Assembly (NCBI GenBank): GCA_000388065.2
Contig: KB932207.1
DNA length: 17,985 nt
Strand: one strand, 5' to 3'
DNA from: Fonticula alba ATCC 38817
Taxonomy: Eukaryota; Protista; Nucleariida
Both the position numbers and the translations under genes were made by a program. The notes beneath the pieces are model-generated. The model saw only the letters and a program-made list of their open reading frames with translations, did no database searches and was not told the origin of the DNA. Positions within the stretch are counted from its first letter, which is position 1. Each line of letters starts with the position of its first letter. Positions 684-16,059 of the stretch are shown here, piece by piece.

Positions 684-1100
684 TCAGGGGGAGTTGTTTT
701 CGGCCATCGAGCGCAGGCGGGCCTCCACGGCCAGACGCCGGCGTTCGCGCTCTTCGGGCGAGTTGGCACTCGGCCGTGCAGGGGCCGGGGCCGGGGCCGG
801 GGCCGGAGACGGGGTGGGGCTCGGGGCCGGGCCTGGCCGCGGGGTCGGCCGCGACCCGGGCGGCTTCGCGGCGGTCGGCCGCGCCGGCGCATATCCAACG
901 GGCTCGTCCAGGCGCTGGCCCACCAGCGGCGACCCCTGAGCACGGAGGTTGGTCCGTCGGATGCGGTCCCGGATGTCCTTGGAGGACAGGCGCCCGAGCT
1001 CGGAGCTGCGTGGCCCGGGGGCTGACCCGCCGGCCGGGCGCAGGAGCAGCGCCGACTGGATGAGATCCACATCGGCCGCCGGGGTGGTGGTGGTGGTGGT

Positions 1101-1133
<33 letters not shown>

Positions 1134-2917
1134 ACCCGTAGCGGAGCCTGGCCCTGGCGGCGGGGGAGCCACCGCCTGCAGGTACGACTGGCGATCCAGC
1201 GGCCCCGGAGACACGCGGCCCGCGCGCGCCCAGTCCCACCGGCCCGGGTGCCGGGCCCAGGCCCGGCAAAAGGCCGCGCGCACCTCCTCCGATGCTGCGT
1301 CCTCGAAGGGGGTCTGGCGGCGAAGGTCAGTTAGAACAGGCCGAGGACATTGGGATCGTGGGGGTCTTCCGCCTGCCCCGGGCCCCACGCGCCCTGCACC
1401 TGGCTTCGGCCGTGTGATGGGGGGGGGGGGGGAGAGGCCATGCGGGCGAAGGGCGACATGCGCAGGCGGCAGATGAAACGCACCACGCGGGCACTGGCAC
1501 CGGACGCGCGGGTCATGCGCGGATCAAAGCCGACTTCCAGCAGGATGGAGCACACCTGGTGCGAGGATGAGGAGGCCGCCTCATGCAGGAGATTCTGGGA
1601 AATGGAGCCAAAAGTACACACACACACACACTCGGAGTCAGACAAAAGCCAAGGAGAGGGCAGGGGGATCCGCCAAGCCGAGGGGGGGAAAGAGGGGCCG
1701 GCACACAGCCGCCGGCCAGCACGCACCCCACCATCAGGCTCGCAGTGGGCAAGGAGGCGGTCAAGCAGGGCGGCCTGCTCCGGGGTCCGGGTCGGGGTCA
1801 CTCGGGCCACGAACTCCTCGGCCGCCAGCTCCGCATCTTCGGCGGGCGCCTTGACAACCTCTATCCCGAGGGCCAGAAGCTCGGAGCGCAGGACACCGGT
1901 GGACTTGCGCGCCACTGCCCGACGCAGCCGGCGGACAATCTGCTGGACCTTGGCCAGGAGCGGATCCGCGGGGGTTTCAGCCGATGCCGGGGGCTCAGCT
2001 GTCACAGGGGCCGCCGCCACCGCCACAGGCAGAGGACCGGCGGGCTCGGGGGCAGCGGGCTCCGGTGGCGTCCGGGACACGGTCACCACCGCCAGCTCCT
2101 CCGCAATGCGCTGGAGCTCGTCCACCTTCGGCCGACTGGTGGACATCGGTACCGGGAGGATATTGTCTACCATGCCACCAGGGGAGGGGGGGAGGAGCGT
2201 GTGTCAGGAGTCAGCTTGGCGGAGGTGTGTGTGTGTGTGCGTGTGTCTGTGGGTGTGCGCGTGCGGGACCGTGCAGGCCCCCGCGAGGGCAGTCACACTG
2301 CCCCAGACGGAAGGTGCGCAGAGAGACAGGCAGGAGGGGACAAGAAAAAGAAAAAGGAAAGAGGGCGGCAACATTCGCACCAAATTGCCCGAGCAGCGAG
2401 TGCGCCATCCGTCGATAGTCCCCGAGAGCCACTAAAAAGAGGCCAACTTCCGGCTTGACCGCCGACCAGGCACTTCCCGGCCCGGTCAGGTACTGGGCCA
2501 CGTCTGCGCGCCAAAGGCGCTCATTTTCACGGCGCATCTGCGCACCGGCACTCTGCGCGGCCGAGCCCTTGGCATCGTGCGCCAGCTGCGAGCCACCCTG
2601 CTTGCGCCGGGTGGTGTAACGCACAAAGGTACAGGGGGCCGGCTGCCGGGACACCGCCGGGCCGTTGAAGGCCGCCGACGCATAGCGCCCACTCTGCATC
2701 ATCATCACGGCGAACCGGTGCGTCTGCGGGTCGCGCGTTGCCGCCAGGAAGGCTCGCACCAATTGCATCTCAAAGTATTGCACGGCCCCGGGCAGGCCAT
2801 GGGCCTCGGCATGCGCCAGGAGGTCTGAAAAGGGGGCGGGGGGAGAAGGAGGAGGAAGAAGCCGCGCATCTTGGTCGTCAGCGACAGCAGCAGCAGCAAC
2901 AGTAGCAACAGTAGCAG

Positions 2918-2992
<75 letters not shown>

Positions 2993-3005
2993 CAGCAGCA
3001 GCAAC

Positions 3006-3048
<43 letters not shown>

Positions 3049-4160
3049 ATAGAAGCACAAAGAAGCGCATGCCCCTCCCCATCCTCACCGAGGCACGACA
3101 ATGGAGAAAGAAAAATGCAGGCCACCAGCTGACCGACACGCACCGGCATAGGAGCGGGACTTCGGCGAGAAGCGTGGCTCCACGAGGAAGCGATACAGTG
3201 TGATGTAGTGGCGGTCGCCGGGGGTGCCGTCCGGCGGGCGCACTGCCAGTGTGATTTTCGGCGACCGAAGAAGCCCCCGGAACCAGTAGTGATTGTCCCC
3301 CGGGTCGCCGTCGGCCGTGGGGACCGGCAAATTGGACGCCTGGAGCGAGGTGCGGCCGAAGTGCTCATCATCCCCGGCGGCATGGTCCTCCTCGTCCTCT
3401 TCGGCCTCCTCGTCGTCGTCCTCTTCGTCGTCGTGATCCAGCGAGGCGTCCGAGCCGTCACTATTCTCATCGGCCGAGGAGGAGGATCCCGTCATGAGGT
3501 GGTCACTCGCCGGTCCATCGGAGAGACCGTCGTCGCCGGACAGCGAGCCCCGGGGCTGCGTATCGTCTGAGGAGCGCGGCCGGCGTCAGCCATGGGGCGC
3601 ACTTTGCCCGGCATGTGGGCAGATCAAAGGCACAGGGCAGTGCCGGAGGCGGGAGAGGCACAGCAGCGCGGGTAATCAGGCTGCCCGGATCGACACGCAC
3701 CAGGGTTTCCCACCAAGACAGGCGCCAGGCCATGGCGCTTGCGCTGCATGTTGGCCAGGTGCACTGGGTCCCGGGAGAAGTGCATCCGCTGCTCGGCCAC
3801 CGAGGAGAACTCCTCGACGCCGCACAGGAGGCACGAGAGGGCCGCCATCTCCGGGTGCCGGGGGGCAGCCGCCGGGGAGATGGCCGCCGGCGGAGCGGCC
3901 ACGGGCGGGGCTCTCGTCGCCGATGAGGCCGGCGTGGGGACCTGGTCCGCGGCCAGGCGCGCTGGCAGGTGGCCGAGCTCAATGCGCTGGTCATACTCGT
4001 GGATGGTGACCAGGGAGGCGGCGTCGCGATGCGTCAACGCCGAGACCACGGCCAGGCGGTCGTGGTCGTGCATGCGTGGCGATCGCTTCGGCGGCTTGAC
4101 CATCTCGAAGATCGACATCCGGAAGGTCGTCCTCGGCGGCTGTTCGAGGGGGGGAGCCAT
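684..4160 (-). CDS. ANKZF1: VMS1/ANKZF1 (ribosome quality-control peptidyl-tRNA release factor, Cdc48/p97 cofactor); 6 exons: 4160-3701, 3566-3144, 2824-2381, 2166-1727, 1594-1484, 1313-684; 2508 nt, 835 aa
   Basis: C2H2 finger CLLC...EQRMHFSRDPVHLANMQRKRHGLAPV (3759-3833). VLRF1 domain FAVMMMQSGRYASAAF...TFVRYTTRRKQGGSQ...QSAGAQMRRENE (GGSQ at 2586-2597). NILPVPMSTSRPKVDELQRI resembles human DIPLATRRPTFQELQRV. Ankyrin repeat LLHEAASSSSHQVCSILLEVGFDP, then TPFEDAASEEVRAAFCRAWARHPGRWDWARA and a C-terminal VIM-like RERRRLAVEAR. All five GT-AG introns join in phase (1,1,1,0,0). Confidence 0.92.
1314..1483 (-). other. ANKZF1 intron 5 (170 nt, phase 0)
   Basis: Donor G|GTGCGT at 1483, branch CTAAC/CTGAC at about 1326-1334, acceptor CAG at 1316-1314; joins GASARV-TPFEDAA. 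Confidence 0.85.
1595..1726 (-). other. ANKZF1 intron 4 (132 nt, phase 0)
   Basis: Donor G|GTGCGT at 1726, CTGAC branch candidate, acceptor CAG at 1597-1595; joins EPDGG-NLLHEAA and restores the ankyrin repeat. The length is a multiple of 3 and has no in-frame stop, so retention would keep the frame. Confidence 0.75.
2167..2380 (-). other. ANKZF1 intron 3 (214 nt, phase 1)
   Basis: Donor G|GTGCGA at 2380, two CTGAC branch candidates at about 2202-2214, acceptor TAG at 2169-2167; joins ...LLGQF-D-NILPVP. Confidence 0.8.
2825..3143 (-). other. ANKZF1 intron 2 (319 nt, phase 1), containing a triplet microsatellite
   Basis: Donor G|GTGCGT at 3143, branch CTGAC at 2881-2877, pyrimidine tract, acceptor CAG at 2827-2825. 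An alternative in-frame AAG lies at 2872-2870. Confidence 0.78.
2885..3046 (+). repeat. Compound (CAG/CAA/TAG)54 triplet microsatellite; CUG/UUG-rich on the ANKZF1 transcript
   Basis: 162 nt of cag/caa triplets with occasional tag, lying inside intron 2. Confidence 0.95.
3567..3700 (-). other. ANKZF1 intron 1 (134 nt, phase 1)
   Basis: Donor G|GTGCGT at 3700, branch CTGAC at 3589-3585, acceptor CAG at 3569-3567; splicing restores the frame. Confidence 0.85.
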
Positions 4161-5953: not shown

Positions 5954-7072
5954 TCAAGAGAGCGGCTGAGTGGGCCCCAGGTCCAGGGCCGACACGTCGG
6001 GGTCGTGCCACAGCCAGGCCCGGGGGATGGGGGTGACCCCGTCCAGTCCGGGGCCGCTCATGAGGATGAGGGCCGACGTGTCGCCCCGAAGGATGTCCTC
6101 GCCGCGGCTGGCCGGCTCGACGGTCAGGTCGCGCCGGGGGAAGTTCCGCCAGGTGGAATGCCGAATGGGCAGCTCGGCCCGGAGCCCGGCGTCGGGGGTG
6201 CACACCGGCTGCCTGGCGCCGCCGGGGGTGGCGTCGGTGTTCCCCCCTGCCGGGGGCTGGGGGGTGGCCGCGTCGCCGCCGCCGCCGCCGCCGGGCCCGG
6301 GGGCCGACTCGCCGGGGCCGTCGTCGGTGTGGTCCTCGCCGAAGGTCGGGCCGGCTGGCGGCTTTTCGACCTTGGCATTGGAGGGGCATGCGGTGACGGC
6401 CCCGGCTCGGCCGTCCATGTAGGCCACACGCAGACGGTGCCACCCCCGGGCCAGGCCGACGGTCCAGCTGCCCCAGCCGGACCGCGTCAGGGTCCACGGG
6501 TCGGCCTCGATGCAGGAGGCCACCGGGATGCCGATGGCCGTGTCGGCCGTGTGCAGGGGCATCCACCCTTCGCGATCGGCCCGGTCGGAGTAGCCGGTCT
6601 CGGGGAAGCGCTCCAGCGGGGTGAAGATGTCCTGGTTGTTGCCGGTCCCGCCGCGGGCCACCTCGTCGATGGTCGGGTCGCCGCGGTGACGAACGGACTT
6701 GGCCCCGCCGGAGGCCGCGTCCGGGAGCTGGAACCCCGGGCTCATGCGGTACAGCCAGAGGCGGATGTGCTCGGCCGACCCGGCATCATGGGGGTTCAGC
6801 AGGGACGGGTCGAAGTGGAAGGTGTACAGCCCGGCTTGGGGGATGGCCAGCATGCCGTCCATGACATACAGCACGGCCGGGGCCTGGTCCAGCGGGAACT
6901 GCCACCGGGTGGCCAGCATGTCGAAGCGGTCCGGGATGAAGGGATTGGCGGCCTCGGGCTCGGCGCGTGGCTGCTTCGCCTGCGCCGGCGGCCGGTGGCC
7001 CTGGGGCCGGTCGTCGTCGGCCGCCGATGCGCCGGTGGCGGCCGTCATCAGCTTCTTCTTGTGCCCCTGCGG

Positions 7073-7111
<39 letters not shown>

Positions 7112-8122
7112 GGCGCGCAGCAGGGCCGCCGCGTCCGACCGCACACTGACCCCATTGGCGGGCGGGGTGTCGAGGTCCGGCCGGGTGGTCGGCCGGATGT
7201 AGGTGTCCGGCAGGGTGATGGCCGGTGGCTGGCCCTCGCCGCCGATCCCCTGCGGCAGGGGGAGGTCCGGGTCCCGGCGACCGAGCCACCGGGTCTCCAC
7301 GGCCCGGCGCAGGGCCCCGTCCAGGGGGGCCGGGCTGCTGGTGGCCCACCCGGGCCCGAGGACCAGCCCGTGCGTGGCCGGGGCCAAGGGGTCCAGGGCC
7401 GCCGCGCGGAGGAAGTCCTCCTGGTGGACCCCCTCGCCGACGAGCCGGACGCCCGGCTCGCCGAGGGTCATGATCCGGCTCTCAAAGCCAAATAGCGCCC
7501 GCGCGGCCAGGCCCTTGCGCAGGCCGGCCTTCGTGGCGTCCGACTGGATGAGCTTGGCGTCCTTCTCGCGCTGGGCCGCCTCGCGCGTCAGCGGCCCGGG
7601 GGCCGGGGCCACCTCGGCCGAGGCGGCCACAGCCATGGCGCCGTGCGGCTGCTGCGGCTGCTGCGGCTGCTGCTGCTGCTGCTCCTCATCTTCCGCTTGC
7701 TCCTCGGTCCGCCGGGCAGCCGGGCCTGTGTCCGGCCGGAGCGGGGGCATTTCCCTGTGCGCGACCAGCAGCGGGGACAGATCGGCCCCCCTGCCGGGGC
7801 CGGCCATGGCGGCAGATGCGACGGCGGCCGGGCGCCCGCGCGGCGGCGAACCCGGCGCCGCCGGCACCGGCGACCACGCCGACACCGGCACCAGATCCGG
7901 GCTCAGGAGATCGGTCAGATGGTCGAAGTCGCTTGGCTGCCGGGAGAAGCGCCCGGCGGTGCCCGGCTCCTCGGGCCCCGGGGCCCGGGCGGGACATGGC
8001 GTCGGCGTCGAGGACGGGTGCCCGGGCCGGCCGCCGCCGGCCGGCATCTTCGGCACCAGCGCCAGCCAGGGGGACGACGGGGCCGACTGGTCGCCGGCCA
8101 AGTCGGCGGCCACCGCTGCCGG

Positions 8123-8153
<31 letters not shown>

Positions 8154-10511
8154 GCCCCCCCATGCTCGTGGGGTTCGTCGGCCAGCGCACGAGCCGACGT
8201 GCCCTGCCCCGGAGGGGGCAAGCGCCGGACCGGGGCCCGAGCATACCGCCGGGCCTGGAAGAAGGACAGGGCCTCGGGGCCGGCGCGCGTGGACGACCGG
8301 TCGGCCGGCAGGGCCAGCGAATTCCGACCCAGGGCCGACCGGCGGAAGGCCCGCGCCCGGATGATGACCGTGCGCGGCTGCAGCCGGAGCCCGGTCAGCC
8401 CGGCCGAGTAGAGCGGGCTGGTGGAGGTGGGCTCCGACCCGTCGATGGTGTAGCGGATTTCGATGTCCCCGCCATCGTCATCCTCCATGCCGGGGCCGGG
8501 GATGAAGACCGGGCCGCCGCCGGTCGGAGCGCCGGGCTCCCGGCCGAAGGCCGCCGGGCCGTAAAACAGCGCCCGGTGGGGATAGGTCGAGCTGCCGGGC
8601 GAGTCGACGTCCGGCTCGGCGTCCAGGGCCATGACCACGCGCAGGTCCCGGATGCCGGAGGCAAAGCACGTCCCGGCCACGAAGGTGGTGGAGGTGGTCG
8701 GCTGCAGGGTCTCCTCGCCGGGGTAGTCGGCCTGCCGGTCGGCCGGCATGCGGCTCCGGCCGAGATGCCAGTCGCCGCTGAGCCACACCCGCACCCGGGG
8801 CAGCGGGGTCAGCACCCCGCGCAGGGCCTCGACAGTGGTCGGCTGCAGCAGGACCTCGGCGTCCCACAGGTGGGCCATTTGCCCCAGCCACAGGGGATTG
8901 CGCCGGTCCCGGATGAAGGGCGGCTGCGGGCAGCCCAGCACCAGGCCCGTCCAGTCGGCCGACCGGTCGTCCGCGCTCCAGATGGGCTGCAGGGTGTTGG
9001 TGGCTCGGCGGTCGCGCTGCAGCGCCTCCGGCCAGGGGTTGGGGTCGGTGCCGGGCCCGGACCCGGCGGCGGGGGCCTTCTTCCGGCCACCGCCGCCGCC
9101 GCCGCCGCCGGTGGACCCGGCCGGCGGCCCGGCCGGTTCCAGCACCCGGGTCGAGGTGCCGCCGGTGTCGGCCACCCGTCGCGGCTCCTGGGTCAGCTCC
9201 AGCAGCTCGGCCCGCGACAGGGCGGCCCCCCGGCGCGTGAGCAGGCACGCCTCGGCCCGCAACTTCAGCCGGCCATCCACCAGGCTGTGGTGGCATGCGG
9301 CATCGAAGCGAGCCCGGCCGTAGCTGGCATTCGGGTCCAGCCGCAGGAGGGCTTCACGATTGTCGGCCAGCGACAGGACCGCCCGGTGCCCGGACAGGCG
9401 ATCGTGCAGCGTCAGCAAGTGCGACCCGAGCAGCGAGGCGGTCGGCCCGGCGGCCGGGCCCTCGGCCCCCGGCAGCTGGGGGAAGAACTCCATCAGGAAG
9501 CGCGCGCTGTCCACCCGCCGGGCCTGCTCGTAGGCCCGGTGGTCGCCGGCATGCGACCAGGCCCGGACGAATTCCGCATCGCGCTTGGCCAGCGTGGCCA
9601 CCGGCCGGGTGATGAGCCCATGCGACACGGACAGCAGCTGGGCCCGCGTGCCGAAGTCCAGCAGCTGGCGCACCCGGCCGCGGAAGCCCCGGCGGATGTC
9701 CTCCGACCGGAAGGTCCGGTGCAGGTGCGTGCGGGCCCCATCGCGCGGGGTGTACACCGACACCACCTGGCAGAGGGTCATCTCGGCGGCCTCCAGCCCG
9801 GGGGTGGTGTACCCGGCGGCGCCGCCCTTCGGCGGCAGGACAAACCCCAGCCGCAGGCGATAGGACATGTACCGGGTGCGAGCCCACCGCCGGGGGGCCG
9901 ACCGGGACATCAGCATCGACGAGGGAGCGCCCTCGGTGATGGGCGTCTCCTCGACCACCATCATGGAGATGGGCTGCGTGGTGAACACCCGGACGCTGTG
10001 GCCGGCCATGCCCGGGGCGTCGAACGACACGATGACCTCATTGGGGCCGAAGCGCCGGACGCGCCACTCGGCCGCCATGCGGCTCGGGTCGCCATCCGGC
10101 ACATCCTCATACCCGGTGTCGTAGGCCGGCAGGCGCTTGTACACGCGCTGCCGCGGCAGCCCGGCATCCGGCGCGTCGATGTACATGTCGTCCCACTCGT
10201 GGAAGAGACACAGGCTGTCCAGCACCCACTCGTACACGCGGGTCAGGCCGCCGCCGGGTGGCTGGCGCTCGTCCGGCCCGAGGACCCCCTGGCCAATGCG
10301 GTCGACCACGACAAAGGCGCCGGAGCTGCCGCCGCCCACCCGGCCGCCGGCCGTCGGGTCGACATTGGACTCCTGGCCGAAGTCCTTCAGGAAGAACACC
10401 TGCCGGGTGTGGGACAAATCGCGCATGATGTTGTCCTCGGACACGCGCGGCGGGGTGTCCGGCATCGGCCGGATCTGGGGCTCCGACGGGGGGATGACCT
10501 CGGGGCTGGCC

Positions 10512-10555
<44 letters not shown>

Positions 10556-13500
10556 CGGCGGCGGCCCGGCGCCCGGGTGCGCATGGCGCCGGGACCGGAC
10601 CCCGGCGGGGGGCCCCTGCCCGGCCGGCCCCATGCCGGTCGGAGTGGCCAGGATGCGCGCGGCCCCGGTCTCCACCCGCCGGCCCAGCAGCTGGTAGAGG
10701 CTGGTGCTGTCGGCCCCGCGGCCCGAGTGGCCGAAGCCGATCTCGTAGGAATTGCGCGAGGACAGGAAGTTCAGCGTGACCGGGGTCCAGGGGGACCCCC
10801 GGCGCCAGGCGCACTCGGCCAGCTCCACGCCGGCGGTGGCGTGCGGGGCCGCGTGCCAGCGCATGTCCCGGGCACAGCTCGGCAAGCTGCCCAGGGCCGA
10901 CACCAAAGCCACGGTCTTCCCGCCGGGCGTGAGCGACCGCATGGCCAGATGCCGCTCCGGCATGAAGGTCGGCCGGCGCAGCATGTCCGGCGTCACCACC
11001 GACCCCGGGGCAATCTCCGGCATGTTGGGGGTGCTTTGGATTTGGCGAATGCGCGGGCCCATGAGGATGATGGCCGGCCGGCCGCGCAGGTGCACCATGA
11101 ACATGTGCTCGTCCACGCGCTCGCCATTGGTGCTGGCCCGCGGCCGGCCGATCAGCGAGGCGAAGGTGAAGTCCCGCTGGGGGTCCCAATCGCCGACGAT
11201 GTTGTCCTCATTGTCCATGATGACGTCGGTCGGCGGGGGGACCGTGGACCCGGGGTCCGAGTCGTCCGTCAGCCGGCCGGCCCCCCCTCCGGGGGTGGCG
11301 GCCTCCTTGCGGGCCGCCTTCCCCCCGGACGACTTGGGCTGCTGGACCTCGTGCGTCGGCCGGGGGTAGTCCTCGGACCCCGGGCCGGAGGTCGGCAGCC
11401 ACCGGTCCCGGAAGAGGAACTCCCCGGCATACGGGGCCGCGTCCGACAGGAAGTGGTCATTCAGCGCGCGGTCCAGATCGCGGCCGCTCTCGGCCACCGG
11501 CAGCCAGCCGTCAATCTTCCACGGGGGGGTCGTGCCGATGACGGCCTTCATCGAGGGGCCGAGATCGGCTTGCGGGTCCCTGCCCTTGTTAGAGCGGACT
11601 GGCTCCGGCAGGCGCCGGCGCGCCTCGGCATCCTGGAAGTCCAGCGGCAGCAGGTGCATGTGCAATCTGCCGACCACGCTCCGGGCCACGGCCTTCTCCG
11701 GGAATTGGCGGAAAACCTCCGGCGTGGTGCTCAGCGCACAGCCCAGGGCCATGGGGATCGGGTCGGCCAGTGTCGAGCCCAGGGGGACCGGGTACCGGAC
11801 GGGCAGGTTGTTCTTCAGATCCTCCTCCTCCGGGTCCACCGGGGGGGTGTCGTCATCGCCATCGCCCGGGTCCGGGGTCTCGGGGTCGGTGCCGGGATTC
11901 GGCCCCTCGGGCTCGGTCTCGCCGCCGCCATCTCCTTGACCGGGGTCGGTGCCGGGGTCGGTGCCGGGGTCAGGCTTGGTGCCGGGGTCGGTGCCGGGGT
12001 CAGGCTTGGTGCCGGGGTCGGTGCCGGGGTCAGGCTTGGTGCCGGGATCGAGTTCACCGCCGGAATCGGGCTTGGTGCCCGGATCGGGATCGGGCTCAGG
12101 CACAGTGCCAGGATCGGGCCCCGGATCGGGCTCAGGCACAGTGCCAGGATCAGGACCGGGATCAGGACTGGGATCAGGACCGGGATCAGGACCGGGATCA
12201 GGACCGGGATCAGGTCCCGGATCAGGACCCGGATCAGGTCCCGGATCAGGTCCCGGGCCCGGACTCGGCTGCTCGGGCTCAGTGTCCCCACCAGTATCGA
12301 CGTCGCCTCCGCCGGTGCCCGGCTCGAGCCCGGGCTCGGTGTTCTTCTTCTTGCGCTCCTTGCGGCCCTCGTTGCCGGTTTCCGGCTCCAGGACCTCGGG
12401 GAGGGGATTGATCTTTTTGCGGACCTTGTCCGGGTTGCGAGTCTTCTTGCCGGTCAGCGCCTGGACCTCGTCCGCGGCCGAGGACAGCCCCCCGGCCGCG
12501 TCCGCCATGGCCAGGGCGCCGACCGTGCCGGTTGCTGGCGGCCGGGCACCCAGGAAGCCGAGCATGCGCTGAACCAGGGCCGGCGGCGCGCCGGTGGTGG
12601 CCGGTGGCGGGGGACACGCGCGGTTCCGCCGCGGCACGCCCGGCCCCACAGCCGTCAAGGCAGCCGGCACACCCAGCCCGGCGGGGTCCTCACCATCGAG
12701 CAGCATGCCCCGGCGAATGCCCCGCCCCCCGGCCGCGGCCGCGGCCGCTGCCTCATGGTAGCCGAGGAGCTCGCGATCGCGCTGGCGCCGGAGCCTCGGG
12801 CACATCCACCGGGAGCTGGCGCGCCGGGGCTCCCGGGAGGCCCCGCCGGCCGAGGCCTCGGCCACCGCGGGCGCCAGCACACAGGCGGCCGCCTCGTGGC
12901 CCTGCTCATCCGGCAGGACGGTCAGGCGCCCCTCGCCGGTCCACTCCTCCCGGGCCAGGTGCTCGGGGGCCGGGTCTTCGTCGGTGGTGTGCTGGTCGTG
13001 GCCCGGGGCCGGGTCCGCCGGGAGGACATGCTCCCGGACCCAGCGCCGATACTCCGGATTCAGCTCCAGCCACACGCGGGCCTCCTCCAGGAGCTCCTGC
13101 GTGACGCGCACATAGTCCGGCCGCTTGAGGCTGTACGGCGAGACGATGGTCTGCGGGACCAGGTAGTAGCGCTGGCGCCACTCGACCTCGCGGGCGATGC
13201 CCTCGCGCCCGGGGCGGGGCATGTCGGCAATCATGTTGCGCAGGTCCACGCATATTTGCTGCACCGACAGCAGCACCGTGGCATCCACATGGGGGCCCCC
13301 GACGCCGGGACCGCCGCCGGCGTCGGCGAAGCACACCTCGCCGATGAAGGCCGAGTGCAGGCAGCGCGCCTGGCCGCTGGTGTTGCCGGCCCGGTGGCTG
13401 AAGCCATCCTGCTTGATGCGCCGAAGCAGGGAGCTGGTGTAGGCCAGCCGGCGGATGGACTCCACCTGGAGCCAGGCCGGCGCCGCGGCGCCGCGCTGCT

Positions 13501-15262
13501 GCGGATCCAACGGCCCGTCGGCCGTCACGCCGCCCAGGTCATCGCCCTCGTACAGGTCGTCCACCGGCTCGCCGGCGCCGAACCCATGGGGCACGGCCGC
13601 CGGCGGGGCGTCCGCAATGCCGATGGGCCCGGCGTCGGCGGCCGTGATGCGTGCCAGCTGGCCGGCCCCGGCGGCCTGGGCCTCCGGCTGCGGGGGGTAT
13701 GGCCGCTGCCGGGGCGGCCGGATGAAGCTGGCATCCCGGCCACAGGGACACCAGAAGGTGCACCGGCGGCCATCATCCCCAAAGGGACACACCTTCGGCG
13801 GGGGCTCCGGGGCCGTGGGCCACGGGTCCCCCTCGGCCGGCGTGGCATCGGCCCGGGCCGCGGCGGCCCCCTGCCCGGGCACCACCACCCTCGGCAGCCG
13901 GTCGCCGGCGGCATGGTCCTGCGTGCCGATGAGGAAGTCCCGCGGGGGCCGGACAAACCACCCGACCAGGGCCGGGTGGCTCAGGGAAAAGAGCCACAAC
14001 CGGCGAATGAGATTCCCCAGGTACAGGTTGTCCATGGCCTCGTGGGCATGGTCATTCCACTCGAGCGGGGCGCCGTCCAAATTCAGCCGGCCCGTGGTCC
14101 AGAGGGCCATCCAGTGGCGGCGGGCTTCGCGAATGGCCCAGCGCCCGATGCGCAGCTCGTCGAACATCAGCCCGACCATGGTCAGCGAGGCCAGGGCCGC
14201 GGACCGGTGGTTGGCGGCCGTCTGGCGCATTTGCATGACCGTCACGCCGACCAGCTCCTCCAGGGCCGTGATCATGGCCAGGGTCAGGGCCTCGGCCGGC
14301 AGCTGGGCCTCCGGCTCCGGCCGGACGGCCGCAATGCGCGTCAGCTCCCCGAGGAAGCCCAGCAGCATGCTCAGGGTGCAGGTGATGAAGTAGAACCGCG
14401 GGTTGGTGGCCGTCCGGGTGGCCTGGGCCGGCATGCGGGTGGCCCAGTCGACCGTGATGTCGGCCCATGCCTGGAGCAGGGCCCGGTCGGCGGCCGCCTG
14501 GCCACCGAGCACCCCGGACAGGGCCTTGGTCTCGTAGGCCCGGAGCAGCGGCCCGGCCGCGTAATTCAGCGTCACCACCGCCCGCGAGAAGGCCATGTCC
14601 TCCTCGGCGCTGGGCACGCTGGAGGGGACGGTGTTGGCCGGGGGCTGGACCCCGGCCGACCCGGCCAGCGGCACGGCGCACCAGTTCCACCGGCCGCGCG
14701 GGCCCATGCGCGCGCGAGTCACCCCGCCGATTTTCCGCGCTGCCCGGTCGGCTCCCGGCTGGGCCAGCCCCCCATGGTCGCAAGTGACCACGTCATCCTG
14801 CAGCAGGCGCAGCACATCGCGCCGGATGCATGAGGCCACCTCGCTGGCCCAGCGGGCCTGGTTCAGGATCCACAATGGCTCGGGCTCATCCTCGCGTGGC
14901 CACCGGGCTGGCGGGTCGTCCACCGACGGCTCCGGCGTGGTGGTGGGCGGCTCGGTCGGCGTCGGCACGGTGCTGGTGGGGGGCGGCTGGATGGGGGCGG
15001 TCGGCCCGCCCGGGGGGGTGCTGCCGGCCGGCAGCGGCGGCGCATGGCTCCCATCATACCGGAAGGGCAGCTGGTGGTAGTTGAAGTTGTTGCGCAGCCG
15101 GCGGAAGATCAGGTCCCGGAAGGTAGTGGCTGCCAGGGCCGGGTCCCCGGAGGCCAGGGACTGGTGCAGCAGGCGGATCTGCGGGCTGGCGTTGGGCCGC
15201 GGCGGGGCCACCGCCGCACGCAGCCGGTCCGCCGTGAACTGGCCCAGCTTCTCCGGGTCCAT
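5954..15262 (-). CDS. Giant (3102 aa from M-DPEKL) heparinase II/III-like protein with Fn3-associated (CHB_HEX_C_1) and PA14 domains; probably catalytically degenerate
   Basis: 9309-nt stop-free frame with strong GC3 bias and many globular-looking segments. Recognisable motifs are listed in the domain features below. The ATG at 15262 directly follows a CAG acceptor with a CTGAC branch, so the 54-aa extension in the ORF track is probably intronic. Confidence 0.85.
5998..6870 (-). other. PA14-like carbohydrate-binding domain interrupted by low-complexity insertions
   Basis: YVMDGMLAIPQAGLYTF...IRLWL...GWGSWTVGLARGWHRLRVAYMDG...ILMSGPGLDGVTPIPRAWL follows the PA14 order W.G.L.VP..G.YTF...RLW(I/L)...G.V.L..G.H.I.V.Y....L.WSGPG.....IP...L. 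Confidence 0.75.
8345..8467 (-). other. Fn3-associated / chitobiase-beta-hexosaminidase C-terminal (CHB_HEX_C_1) domain
   Basis: DIEIRYTIDGSEPTSTSPLYSAGLTGLRLQPRTVIIRARAF matches the hallmark IRYT(L/T)DGSEPT..S..Y..P.......T.(V/I)KARAF. Confidence 0.9.
9740..11435 (-). other. Heparinase II/III C-terminal beta-sandwich-like domain
   Basis: PYAGEFLFRDRW resembles FPYAGYYVMRSGW. WDPQRDFTF...GERVDEHMFMVHLRGRPAIILMG resembles WD....YL.F..GP...H.H.D..SF.L...GR.LLVD.G. AFVVVDRI...VYEWVLDS resembles Y.VVVD.....H.YEW.LH. Boundaries are approximate. Confidence 0.65.
11941..12254 (-). repeat. Coding tandem repeats giving a Pro/Gly/Asp/Thr linker: 9 x 12 bp (GPDP-type; 12147-12254) and 3 x 30 bp (DPGTKPDPGT-type; 11961-12050)
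   Basis: Units GGATCAGGACCG (with variants) and GTGCCGGGGTCAGGCTTGGTGCCGGGGTCG, read directly; both unit lengths are multiples of 3. Confidence 0.92.
14042..15175 (-). other. Heparinase II/III N-terminal (alpha/alpha toroid)-like domain
   Basis: TLNYAAGPLLRAY...LQAWADITVDWATRMP resembles the family pattern LNR...L..AY..TGD..Y...W.....DW...NP. NHRSAALASLTMVGLMFDELRIGRWAIREARRHW...LNLDGAPLEWNDHAH resembles NH.......L...G..FPEF.....W...A........Q..PDG...E....YH. Patterns recalled from memory; no HMM was run. Confidence 0.7.
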
Positions 15263-15264
15263 GG

Positions 15265-15304
15265 CTGGGGCGCGGGCCCGGGGGGGGCAGGCAGTGCGTG
15301 TCAG
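15265..15304 (-). other. 3' end of a putative intron immediately upstream of the giant ORF (branch CTGAC 15304-15300, acceptor CAG 15267-15265)
   Basis: Minus strand reads C38-GCCTCCCTCGCCA-CTGAC-ACGCACTGCCTGCCCCCCCCGGGCCCGCGCCC-CAG|CC-ATG. This is the same signal set as the five ANKZF1 introns. The donor is not resolved. Confidence 0.6.
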
Positions 15305-15316
15305 TGGCGAGGGAGG

Positions 15317-15317
<1 letters not shown>

Positions 15318-15355
<38 letters not shown>
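15318..15355. repeat. G38 homopolymer
   Basis: 38 consecutive G, counted. Confidence 0.95.
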
Positions 15356-15624
15356 CTTCGTGTTCCGGCTGTTTGCCGGGCTCCGGGCATATGCGCTTTC
15401 CCCCGCCCCCGTGTGCGTGCGCATGTCCCTCGCCCACCTTCTCCGGCGCCCTCACTCGCCTTCCTCCATCCTTCCCGTGCACTCTTCTCGCATCAGTGGG
15501 TCTTTCTCCTGCCTGCTCAAATCGATGGGCAGGGAGAGGGCGCGTGGATGCTGAATGGTCCCTTGCTTTCGGGCGTGGCCAGGCGTGCCAGCACACCGGG
15601 ACGCGCTCGCGCGCAAGCGAACAG

Positions 15625-15666
15625 ACAGCCGCACAAGCATCGACAGCCGCACAGGGATCGACAGCC
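15625..15666. repeat. Degenerate 18-bp tandem repeat (about 2.3 copies)
   Basis: ACAGCCGCACAAGCATCG / ACAGCCGCACAGGGATCG / ACAGCC. Confidence 0.8.
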
Positions 15667-16059
15667 ACCAACGGCCATAGACAGGCGCGGACACCGGGCC
15701 CCGGGCGATCTTGGCCGGGGTCCGCTGGTCCAGGCACCAACCCATTACCCACAAGTAGTTTGTTTGACCCGGATTCATGCGTACTCGGTGGTCCGAAAAG
15801 GCGGGCGCCCGGTCGAGCAACGACTTCGAGTCTTCGCCGGGGTGGGACAGCGGCAGGGCCAAAGGCACAGGGTCACAAGGCAGCAGGCGAGCAAATGCAA
15901 AGGACAATGGAGGCGGGGAAAGGGGAGGCGGTGGGAGGGAGTTGGACTGGCGCACGGCAAGGCGGACCGGCACCCAGGGACTGCCTATTATAGTGGTGGT
16001 GCCCCCCCCCCCCCTCTTCCCCGCTCCTTGCCCTGCATCGCCGGGGTCCTGCCAGCACG

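What the first reader, a model, noticed from the sequence alone, without database searches (positions are those of the whole stretch)
5954..15262. 3102-aa eukaryotic protein built on a bacterial-type heparinase II/III lyase plus Fn3-associated and PA14 modules
Seen: a single 9.3-kb frame with, in order, heparinase-III-like toroid motifs, heparinase II/III beta-sandwich motifs, a clear YTIDGSEPT Fn3-associated domain and a PA14 domain. Known: PL12-type heparinase II/III lyases and the Fn3-associated/PA14 accessory modules are typical of bacterial glycan-degrading enzymes, and such lyases are usually well under 1000 aa. Inferred: this is an unannotated glycosaminoglycan- or uronan-recognising machine in a microbial eukaryote. 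Automatic pipelines would probably label it 'hypothetical' because insertions break the profile hits.
Basis: partly seen in the sequence, partly recalled or inferred. Interest (0 to 1): 0.8.

Follow-up and report, generated by a model that had tools for sequence, protein, structure and literature searches.

The report
Bacterial-type heparinase-like giant protein in Fonticula
A slime-mould-like relative of fungi carries an intact gene of an uncharacterised, mostly planctomycete family of sugar-chain-handling proteins, probably acquired from bacteria; the protein is 2.5 times the usual size because of floppy inserts and lacks two catalytic residues of the enzymes it resembles, so its chemistry is unknown.

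Summary
Window 5954-15262 (minus strand) is one intronless frame, annotated as a 3102-aa product with no Pfam family on record. Third-position GC is about 0.92 along nearly all of it.

Pfam sees only the Fn3_assoc/CHB_HEX_C_1 domain directly. An exhaustive search found an uncharacterised family of about 1250-aa secreted bacterial proteins, mostly Planctomycetota. Their layout is signal peptide, discoidin-like domain, heparinase-III-like toroid, beta-sandwich, Fn3_assoc, PA14. The Fonticula protein matches this family collinearly from toroid to PA14.

- Family profiles hit only heparinase III among lyases in the PDB (E 3e-13 toroid, 2e-7 sandwich).
- A model of the Fonticula middle part aligns with lyase-type sandwiches at Z 17-21.
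- About 1,880 extra residues sit in many codon-adapted inserts.

The only other eukaryotic member is an intron-bearing gene on a metagenome contig. It is sister to the Fonticula gene (100/98), and both lack the signal peptide and discoidin domain.

The lyase reading is not supported. The whole family lacks the PL12 catalytic Tyr and His (Fonticula has Ala460) and keeps only the Asn. Fonticula also lost two residues invariant in bacteria. Function is inferred, not shown. Scan note s1-065911 had already suggested the Tyr/His loss on this same stretch.

The parts
5954..15262 (-). Annotated intronless CDS (3102 aa plus stop). The open frame extends upstream to an ATG at 15424 (3156 codons). Residue numbers in this report count from that ATG; subtract 54 for the annotated protein.
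   Evidence: ORF list; exact product on record in GCA_000388065.2; GC3 0.91; in-frame stop 9 codons upstream of the first ATG.
13955..15262 (-). Heparinase-III-like (alpha/alpha) toroid, first part (aa 55-490). It holds Asn405-His406 (the 'NH' motif) and the motif LDGAPLEWNDHAH, where Ala460 replaces the PL12 catalytic Tyr.
   Evidence: Family HMM E 1e-43 for aa 235-476; 36.6% identity to the eukaryotic orthologue over aa 178-490; profile A6 hits only heparinase III in the PDB, E 3e-11; language-model neighbours are all toroid-lyase N domains.
13505..13954 (-). Pro/Ala/Gly-rich insert of about 150 aa inside the toroid (aa 491-640), with a Cys cluster CPFGDDGRRCTFWCPCGRD at aa 546-564.
   Evidence: Absent from L001sp and the bacterial members; GC3 0.90, so it is coding.
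13325..13504 (-). Last toroid helices (aa 641-700). PAWLQ...LLRRIKQDGFSHR keeps family columns P511, W513, R535, G541 and R545.
   Evidence: Weak collinear BLASTP match aa 619-685 to L001sp 336-405; the motif match to the family consensus was read by eye.
11465..13324 (-). Toroid-to-sandwich linker region, hugely expanded (aa 701-1320). It has some ordered stretches, a low-complexity block, a Lys-rich NLS-like patch (aa 993-1028) and PDPG/DPGTKPDPGT tandem repeats (aa ~1041-1165).
   Evidence: Composition scan; tandem repeats 11940-12250; GC3 0.58 in the repeats against ~0.9 elsewhere; 9 of the protein's 48 Lys lie in aa 980-1030.
8615..11461 (-). Heparinase II/III-type beta-sandwich (aa ~1322-2270), interrupted by at least 12 inserts of 20-88 aa. 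It keeps family residues S1327, D1328, P1331, Y1332, G1334, R1339, W1342 and others.
   Evidence: Collinear HMM pieces; alignments A2/A4 place the family-invariant Arg and Phe; A2 profile against heparinase III 4mmi, E 6.5e-6; AF2 model plus VIA-align Z 20.6 (PL39), 19.2 (exoHep), 17.7 (HepC, 18% identity, model residues 98-942), with unrelated sandwiches at about 11.5; Foldseek top hit exoHep, E 6e-4.
8234..8467 (-). Fn3_assoc / CHB_HEX_C_1 domain (aa 2320-2397), including YTIDGSEPT at aa 2325-2333.
   Evidence: Pfam E 4.4e-7 and 5.5e-7, above the curated cut-offs; family HMM E 1.6e-12.
6950..8233 (-). Low-complexity insert of about 430 aa between Fn3_assoc and PA14 (aa 2398-2825), with poly-Ala, poly-Gln and poly-Pro runs.
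   Evidence: Translation; GC3 0.92; the bacterial members have about 60 columns here.
6002..6949 (-). PA14-type domain (aa 2826-3141), split by inserts of about 90 and 80 aa. Signature pieces are GLYTFHFD (2865-2872), WGSWTVGLARGWHRLRVAYMDGR (2984-3006) and LILMSGPGLDGVTPIPRAWLWH (3119-3140).
   Evidence: Family HMM pieces, E 4.7e-7 and weaker, all collinear; all 100 language-model neighbours are PA14 clusters, score 0.91 with 177 shared features; 18 of 42 family C-terminal pieces hit Pfam PA14, best 4.9e-6; C-terminal profile hits PDB 6qdi PA14 at E 9e-4 and 9s8a at E 1.4e-9. Pfam PA14 does not hit the Fonticula piece itself.

Best explanation
The gene encodes a eukaryotic member of an uncharacterised bacterial family found mostly in Planctomycetota. 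The bacterial proteins are about 1250 aa, secreted, and laid out as discoidin-like domain, heparinase-III-like toroid, beta-sandwich, Fn3_assoc, PA14. The gene most likely entered a eukaryotic lineage once, by horizontal transfer, as a complete gene. It then lost its signal peptide and discoidin domain. In Fonticula it gained about 1,880 residues of low-complexity inserts, mostly in surface loops, while keeping the folded core.

Shown here: the collinear homology, the fold, the integration in a eukaryotic scaffold, the sister relation to a second intron-bearing eukaryotic gene, and the missing Tyr/His.

Inferred: the toroid-sandwich cleft still binds a polysaccharide, probably acidic, and the PA14 and Fn3_assoc tail adds glycan affinity. 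Any catalysis cannot be the classical PL12 Tyr/His beta-elimination. It would need other conserved residues: Asn405-His406, Glu455, Asp458, His461, and sandwich residues such as Tyr1332 and a conserved Lys-Thr (family columns 708-709). I favour retained processing of a glycan from prey bacteria or from the organism's own matrix, by the family's unknown reaction.
For: - Family discovery and domain content.
- Collinear HMM matches over the whole length.
- Family profile to heparinase III in the PDB: E 3e-13 for the toroid and 2e-7 for the sandwich. Profiles that include the Fonticula pieces give E 3e-11 and 6.5e-6.
- The P0010 model (pLDDT 81, pTM 0.84) aligns over ~580 residues with PL39, PL15, PL40 and PL12 lyases at Z 23-30. 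The Fonticula central model gives Z 17-21 against the same sandwiches.
- 64 of 80 aligned family-conserved columns are kept, and the 9.3-kb frame is intact with GC3 0.91, which argues for purifying selection.
- The gene sits in a 2.16-Mb scaffold between eukaryotic genes (VPS9, bVLRF1, ARMET_C).
- The L001 orthologue has a GT-AG intron and an SPA/DENND11 neighbour. Fonticula plus L001sp is supported at 100/98.
- Bacterial members have signal peptides and neighbours such as NAGLU/GH89, sulfatase, fucosidase, GH32 and Laminin_G_3 proteins.
Against: - No biochemical data exist for any member of the family.
- The PL12 catalytic Tyr294 and His424 equivalents are absent.
- Fonticula has also replaced two residues that are invariant in all 65 bacterial members, D357 to Val and R414 to Leu or Met, whereas the other eukaryotic orthologue keeps both.
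- No signal peptide or transmembrane segment was found, and a Lys-rich NLS-like patch is present. An extracellular or phagosomal glycan may therefore never meet the protein.
- No expression evidence could be obtained.
- The donor lineage and the rooting are unresolved: 61/29 support at the deep nodes.
Confidence: 0.5

Rival explanations
1. It is a binding-only pseudo-enzyme. The Fonticula protein has lost whatever catalysis its bacterial ancestors had and now serves as a giant glycan-binding or scaffolding protein. Its cleft and PA14 domain act as lectin modules, and the disordered inserts act as spacers.
For: The Tyr and His of the lyase triad are absent. Two residues invariant in bacteria (D357, R414) are lost only in Fonticula. 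60% of the chain is low-complexity insert. There is no signal peptide. Scan note s1-065911 proposed the same idea.
Against: Most conserved polar cleft residues are kept: N405, H406, E455, D458, H461, and the S/D/Y/R/W block at 1327-1342. The Tyr/His loss is a trait of the whole bacterial family, whose gene neighbourhoods look enzymatic, so that loss alone does not show inactivity.
Confidence: 0.33
2. It is a genuine PL12-type heparan-sulfate or uronan lyase working by Tyr/His beta-elimination.
For: The fold and the closest sequence relatives in the PDB are heparinase III. The neutralising Asn, followed by His, is conserved. One bacterial homologue lies beside a GH89/NAGLU gene.
Against: The column aligned with Tyr294 is Gly in 59 of 65 bacterial members and Ala460 in Fonticula. 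The spacing from the Asn is 54 columns, as in heparinase III, so the alignment is secure. The column aligned with His424 is not His. No Pfam Hepar_II_III_C hit was found in the members scanned or on record.
Confidence: 0.07
3. It is a decaying relic of a transfer: an unexpressed or functionless ORF that stays open only because the genome is very GC-rich.
For: GC-rich DNA gives long chance ORFs; the 2396-aa antisense ORF here is one. No reads were recovered (not a valid test). Inserts are numerous and some invariant residues are lost.
Against: 3102 sense codons without a stop, with strong codon-position bias in the conserved blocks and in all inserts except the PDPG tandem array. From this composition I estimate about 0.009 stops per codon, so an open frame of this length is very unlikely by chance. 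64 of 80 conserved columns are kept after a divergence deep enough to leave only 39% identity to the other eukaryotic copy.
Confidence: 0.07
4. It is bacterial contamination or a misassembly in the Fonticula genome.
For: All close relatives but one are bacterial.
Against: The gene lies inside a 2.16-Mb scaffold, flanked by eukaryotic genes. Its GC3 and low-complexity style match the host. The nearest bacterial identity is only about 30%. It lacks a bacterial signal peptide.
Confidence: 0.01

Closest known systems
Heparinase III / heparan-sulfate lyase, CAZy PL12 (PDB 4MMH/4MMI Pedobacter HepC; 5JMD/5JMF and 4FNV Bacteroides)
   Same: Both have an (alpha/alpha) toroid followed by an antiparallel beta-sandwich. 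These are the only lyases that the family profiles reach by sequence in the PDB (E 3e-13, 3e-11, 6.5e-6). They also give the highest structural-alignment identity, 15-18% at Z 17-23. The neutralising Asn, the following His, the DG..E motif and the His after the catalytic Tyr are conserved.
   Different: The catalytic Tyr294 and His424 equivalents are missing. Pfam's PL12 models do not score the protein. It carries Fn3_assoc and PA14 tails and is about 5 times longer. It is eukaryotic and has no signal peptide.
Unnamed family of ~1250-aa proteins, mostly from Planctomycetota, annotated 'chitobiase/beta-hexosaminidase C-terminal domain-containing protein' (for example MDP6354265.1; session proteins P0006-P0093)
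   Same: Homology is collinear from the toroid to the C-terminal PA14. The non-canonical active-site motifs are the same: NH ... DG..E..D..H without Tyr. 64 of 80 conserved columns are shared.
   Different: The bacterial proteins have a signal peptide and an N-terminal discoidin-like domain. They have no long inserts, and D357 and R414 are invariant in them. The Fonticula protein is 2.5 times longer.
L001sp, a 1277-aa orthologue on an ENA metagenome scaffold from an unidentified eukaryote
   Same: It is the sister of the Fonticula gene (100/98), with 36.6% identity over the toroid. It has the same N-terminal truncation: no signal peptide and no discoidin domain. Its context is eukaryotic, with an intron and an SPA/DENND11 neighbour.
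   Different: It is of normal family length with no giant inserts. It has one 156-nt intron. It keeps D357 and R414 but has Gln at E465.
Other toroid-plus-sandwich lyases and dermatan-sulfate epimerase 1 (PL39 6JP4, PL15 exoHep 6LJA, PL17 Alg17c, PL21 heparinase II, PL40, PL33, PL35; human DS-epi1 6HZN)
   Same: Same two-domain fold, Z 16-30.
   Different: There is no detectable sequence relation. All of the lyases use the Tyr/His/Asn triad (PMC12088678), which this family lacks. That DS-epi1 also uses a Tyr/His set is from memory.

Membership tests
CAZy PL12 / heparinase III | N-terminal (alpha/alpha) toroid homologous to Hepar_II_III_N | tested here: met
   Met through profiles. The family HMM matches Fonticula aa 235-476 at E 1e-43. 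Profile A6, led by the Fonticula piece, hits 5jmd at E 3e-11 and 4fnv at E 1.9e-10. Family members score 22-29 bits on PF16889, cut-off 22.
CAZy PL12 / heparinase III | C-terminal antiparallel beta-sandwich of the heparinase II/III type | tested here: met
   A2 profile against 4mmi, E 6.5e-6. VIA-align of the Fonticula model: HepC Z 17.7, PL39 Z 20.6, unrelated sandwiches about 11.5. The model itself is poor (pLDDT 47.6).
CAZy PL12 / heparinase III | Neutralising Asn (Asn240 of Pedobacter HepIII) | tested here: met
   Asn405 in Fonticula; family column 437 is Asn in 63 of 65 members.
CAZy PL12 / heparinase III | Catalytic Tyr (Tyr294), 54 residues after the Asn | tested here: not met
   The aligned column is Gly in 59 of 65 bacterial members, Gly in L001sp and Ala460 in Fonticula (HAH in place of HYH). 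Triad taken from PMC12088678.
CAZy PL12 / heparinase III | Catalytic His (His424) at the start of the sandwich | tested here: not met
   In the profile-to-4mmi alignment, His400 of the chain (= His424) faces a non-conserved Ser/Gly column. No His is conserved in columns 652-675.
CAZy PL12 / heparinase III | Scores above threshold on the curated family models (Pfam Hepar_II_III_N and Hepar_II_III_C; dbCAN PL12) | tested here: not met
   No Pfam or NCBIfam hit, even at E<=10, on the whole protein or its pieces. dbCAN was not available.
CAZy PL12 / heparinase III | Beta-eliminative cleavage of heparan sulfate | not testable with these tools
   This needs an enzyme assay.
Mostly planctomycete discoidin-toroid-sandwich-Fn3_assoc-PA14 family (unnamed) | Collinear homology over toroid, sandwich, Fn3_assoc and PA14 | tested here: met
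   Eight collinear HMM blocks. The orthologue L001sp matches the HMM end to end, E 3e-95 and 3e-58.
Mostly planctomycete discoidin-toroid-sandwich-Fn3_assoc-PA14 family (unnamed) | Family-conserved residues (columns conserved in at least 85% of members) | tested here: inconclusive
   64 of 80 aligned columns are kept, but the strictly invariant D357 and R414 are replaced.
Mostly planctomycete discoidin-toroid-sandwich-Fn3_assoc-PA14 family (unnamed) | N-terminal signal peptide and discoidin-like domain | tested here: not met
   The Fonticula protein and L001sp both start at about HMM column 253. No hydrophobic N-terminus was found.
PA14 domain (PF07691) | Homology to PA14 | tested here: met
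   Indirect. 18 of 42 family C-terminal pieces hit PF07691, best 4.9e-6. The profile hits PDB 6qdi PA14 at E 9e-4. Language-model neighbours of the Fonticula piece are all PA14 clusters, score 0.91. The Fonticula piece keeps the invariant W, L, G, H, D and R. Pfam itself gives no hit on the Fonticula piece, and no structure of it was predicted.
Fn3_assoc / CHB_HEX_C_1 (PF13287 / PF13290) | Pfam hit above the gathering score | tested here: met
   30.4 bits (cut-off 23) and 29.9 bits (cut-off 22) at aa 2320-2362.

The most novel reading that the evidence does not exclude
The family, mostly planctomycete with two eukaryotic members, is a new enzyme class on the heparinase fold. It would have a catalytic apparatus other than the universal Tyr/His/Asn triad, for example a hydrolase, an epimerase or a His/Glu-based eliminase. 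In eukaryotes it would have been re-deployed inside the cell, since there is no signal peptide and an NLS-like patch is present, to act on an intracellular glycan or glycoconjugate.
Probability: 0.12. Interest if true: 0.75.

Novelty: new variant of a known kind. Interest (0 to 1): 0.45.

Why it matters
It gives a real annotation to a 3102-aa 'hypothetical protein' of Fonticula alba, a key outgroup for fungal origins that feeds on bacteria and builds a matrix-rich fruiting body.

It defines an uncharacterised heparinase-fold family that breaks the otherwise universal Tyr/His/Asn rule of toroid-plus-sandwich lyases, making it a candidate for new glycan chemistry. Compact bacterial members of this family could be expressed and assayed directly.

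It is a clean case of whole-gene bacterial-to-eukaryote transfer. It also shows how far a folded multi-domain core can be inflated by loop inserts (2.5-fold) while keeping its hallmark residues.

Tried and rejected
- Direct Pfam and NCBIfam scans of the whole protein and six pieces gave only Fn3_assoc.
- phmmer of the N- and C-terminal pieces against the PDB gave nothing meaningful.
- Word-based homologue searches of the central part found only Fn3_assoc repeats or nothing.
- Language-model search of the central piece was uninformative.
- Reads from four RNA runs listed under 'same species label' gave zero reads on 10000-15999. That is no test, and the single read-laying run is spent, so there is no expression or 5'-end evidence.
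Those rows were dropped, not resent.
- MAFFT misaligned the first half of the Fonticula PA14, so I ran no further search on it.
- The search for related loci found no usable conserved stretch in A7 and no genome relative of P0010. A8 gave eight loci: seven Planctomycetota MAGs and one MAG labelled only 'bacterium'.
- Rejected: the + strand 2396-aa ORF is an antisense shadow.
- Rejected: inserts as unrecognised introns. Their GC3 is 0.89-0.96, like the conserved blocks.
- Rejected: contamination.
- Rejected: an upstream signal-peptide extension in frame, because a stop lies 9 codons above the first ATG. An upstream spliced exon was not excluded.
- Rejected: other short hits as further eukaryotic members. 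They all fall in bacterial clades.
- The ulvan dehydratase paper was checked as a possible non-lyase analogue and found irrelevant.
- No paper links Fonticula with heparinase.
Full report
**Observation.** The minus strand carries one open frame, 5954..15424 (3156 codons). Its codon-position GC is 0.74/0.58/0.91. GC3 stays at 0.88-0.97 in every conserved block and every insert. The only exception is a PDPG/DPGTKPDPGT tandem array (11940-12250, GC3 0.58). The 2396-aa ORF on the + strand is the antisense shadow of this frame and has no Pfam match. The product starting at Met55 (15262) is exactly the 3102-aa protein on record for assembly GCA_000388065.2, scaffold KB932207.1. It has no introns and no Pfam hit on record. 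It is flanked by eukaryotic genes (VPS9-like, bVLRF1, ARMET_C). Earlier scan notes name the genome as Fonticula alba (lineage). A stop lies 9 codons upstream of the first ATG. No signal peptide or transmembrane segment was found.

**What standard tools see.** Pfam finds only Fn3_assoc/CHB_HEX_C_1 at aa 2320-2362 (E 4e-7, above cut-off). No heparinase or PA14 model scores, even at E<=10, on the whole protein or on six pieces. phmmer against the PDB is empty.

**The family.** An exhaustive phmmer search with aa 55-860 found 25 proteins.
- Most are bacterial proteins of 1000-1550 aa. The named ones come from Planctomycetota MAGs and are annotated 'chitobiase/beta-hexosaminidase C-terminal domain-containing protein'.
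- Of the eight scanned with Pfam, three carry weak Hepar_II_III_N hits, seven carry CHB_HEX_C_1 (six of them also Fn3_assoc), and two show sub-threshold PA14 hits.
- A profile search enlarged the family to about 45 clusters.
- A genome scan returned eight loci: seven Planctomycetota MAGs (Pirellulales, Planctomycetales and others) and one MAG labelled only 'bacterium'.
- Members have signal peptides followed by a discoidin-like 'GRYVR' domain.
- They lie among glycan-degrading genes: GH89/NAGLU, fucosidase, sulfatase, GH32 and Laminin_G_3 proteins.

A family HMM matches the Fonticula protein in eight collinear blocks:

| Fonticula residues | HMM columns |
|---|---|
| 236-475 (E about 1e-43) | 293-505 |
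| 1324-1344 | 626-646 |
| 1491-1528 | 695-729 |
| about 1790-1990 | 826-860 |
| 2320-2392 | 1030-1094 |
| 2855-2871 | 1155-1171 |
| 2973-3011 | 1190-1231 |
| 3113-3141 | 1249-1275 |

By eye, aa 649-678 also keep columns P511, W513, R535, G541 and R545.

**Fold.**
- The family profile hits heparinase III in the PDB for both domains: 5jmd at E 3e-13 for the toroid, 4mmi at E 2e-7 for the sandwich.
- Profiles led by the Fonticula pieces do the same: A6 gives only heparinase III entries, E 3e-11, and A2 gives 4mmi at E 6.5e-6.
- AlphaFold2 of Fonticula aa 1225-2400 is poor overall (pLDDT 47.6, pTM 0.58). Its strands still align with lyase-type sandwiches: PL39 Z 20.6, exoHep 19.2, HepC 17.7 (18% identity, model residues 98-942 against chain residues 386-665), DS-epimerase 17.7. 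Unrelated super-sandwiches score about 11.5. The Foldseek top hit is exoHep at E 6e-4.
- A confident model of bacterial member P0010 (pLDDT 81, pTM 0.84) aligns over about 580 residues with PL39, PL15, PL40 and PL12 lyases at Z 23-30. It also matches heparinase II/III clusters in AFDB and the ESM Atlas.
- The Fn3_assoc-PA14 tail is a cassette also found on bacterial alpha-L-fucosidases.
- PA14 evidence: 18 of 42 family C-terminal pieces hit PF07691. The profile hits PA14 entry 6qdi at E 9e-4. All language-model neighbours of the Fonticula piece are PA14 clusters, score 0.91.

**Active site.** Toroid-plus-sandwich lyases share a Tyr/His/Asn triad. In heparinase III these are Tyr294, His424 and Asn240 (PMC12088678).
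- The Asn is kept: column 437, Asn in 63 of 65 members, Fonticula Asn405. It is followed by His.
- The column 54 positions later, the same spacing as in heparinase III, is Gly in 59 of 65 members, Gly in L001sp and Ala460 in Fonticula (HAH in place of HYH).
- The column facing His424 is not conserved and is not His.

This agrees with scan note s1-065911, but it is a trait of the whole family rather than a Fonticula-specific decay. Fonticula keeps 64 of 80 aligned conserved columns, including E465, D481, G482, E486, D489 and H492. It has replaced D357 and R414, which are invariant in the bacterial members.

**Evolution.** The best hit is a eukaryotic gene on a 14-kb metagenome scaffold, L001 (GC 56%).
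- The coding frame is interrupted by a 156-nt GTACGC...TAG intron.
- A neighbouring gene has an SPA/DENND11 domain.
- The spliced 1277-aa product matches the family HMM from column 253 to the end (E 3e-95 and 3e-58).
- Like the Fonticula protein, it lacks the signal peptide and discoidin domain.
- Fonticula and L001sp are 36.6% identical over the toroid and are sisters at 100/98 support (98 in the quick trees).
- Their position among three bacterial groups is unresolved (61/29). All other short hits fall in bacterial clades.

With dozens of bacterial lineages and only two eukaryotic copies, a single bacterium-to-eukaryote transfer is the economical reading. Without an outgroup, this direction is inferred.

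**Inflation.** Fonticula has about 1,880 more residues than L001sp. They form many inserts of 20 aa or more, including:
- aa 491-640 in the toroid;
- much of the expanded aa 701-1320 toroid-to-sandwich linker region;
- at least 12 inserts in the sandwich;
- about 430 aa before PA14;
- two inserts inside PA14.

Most map to loops or strand edges of the P0010 model. Apart from the PDPG tandem array, they show the coding GC3 signature, so they are not missed introns.

**Mechanism (inferred).** The conserved cleft residues, the PA14 and Fn3_assoc tail and the bacterial gene neighbourhoods point to polysaccharide binding or processing. The chemistry cannot be the classical Tyr/His beta-elimination. 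I favour retained, non-canonical processing (0.5 for the overall explanation). The alternatives are a binding-only pseudo-enzyme (0.33), a classical lyase (0.07), a relic (0.07) and contamination (0.01). The absent signal peptide and an NLS-like Lys patch (aa 993-1028) leave the protein's location open. No expression evidence was obtained: zero reads in four runs of unverified origin.

**Verdict.** The architecture reading is supported and the 'lyase' reading is not. This is a new variant of a known kind: a heparinase-fold family lacking the Tyr and His of the triad, with two eukaryotic members, one of them grossly inflated. No paper links Fonticula with heparinase. Interest is moderate.

Noticed in passing
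window 15318-15355: A 38-nt G homopolymer on the + strand (C38 on the coding strand) lies between the first in-frame ATG (15424) and the annotated start (15262). It would encode a run of 15 Pro if translated, and otherwise sits in the 5' UTR.
   Followed up: partly
window 11940-12250: Tandem arrays of 12, 30 and 36 nt encode PDPG and DPGTKPDPGT repeats. Their GC3 is 0.58 against about 0.92 in the rest of the gene, which suggests a young repeat expansion.
   Followed up: partly
window 12341-12448 (aa 993-1028): A Lys-rich patch KKTRNPDKVRKK...GRKERKKKN lies here; aa 980-1030 around it hold 9 of the protein's 48 Lys. It looks like a bipartite nuclear-localisation signal.
   Followed up: no
window 13733-13789 (aa 546-564): A Cys cluster, CPFGDDGRRCTFWCPCGRD, sits inside the toroid insert. 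It could be a small metal-binding knuckle.
   Followed up: no
window 7643-14833 (+): A 2396-aa ORF antisense to the gene. GC at codon position 1 is 0.90 and it has no Pfam hit, so it is a composition artefact of the GC-rich frame opposite.
   Followed up: yes
window ~684-4160 (-): The downstream neighbour is an intron-containing gene annotated with an 879-aa product. It has a bVLRF1 (Vms1/ANKZF1-type peptidyl-tRNA hydrolase) domain, E 9e-19 on the 2211-3470 exon.
   Followed up: partly
L001 8773-12762: A metagenome scaffold from an unidentified eukaryote carries the only other eukaryotic member of the family. The gene has a 156-nt GTACGC...TAG intron at 9672-9827, which the prokaryotic gene caller split into two proteins (P0005 and P0007).
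   Followed up: yes
P0010 model; ESM Atlas rows 8-10: The Fn3_assoc plus PA14 C-terminal tandem is a recurrent cassette, also attached to bacterial alpha-L-fucosidases in Bacteroidota and Planctomycetota.
   Followed up: no
family columns 438 and 490 (P0010/P0017 subclade): One bacterial subclade has NW in place of NH and carries a Tyr one position before the canonical Tyr column (ELTNYLH). This may be an alternative active-site solution.
   Followed up: no
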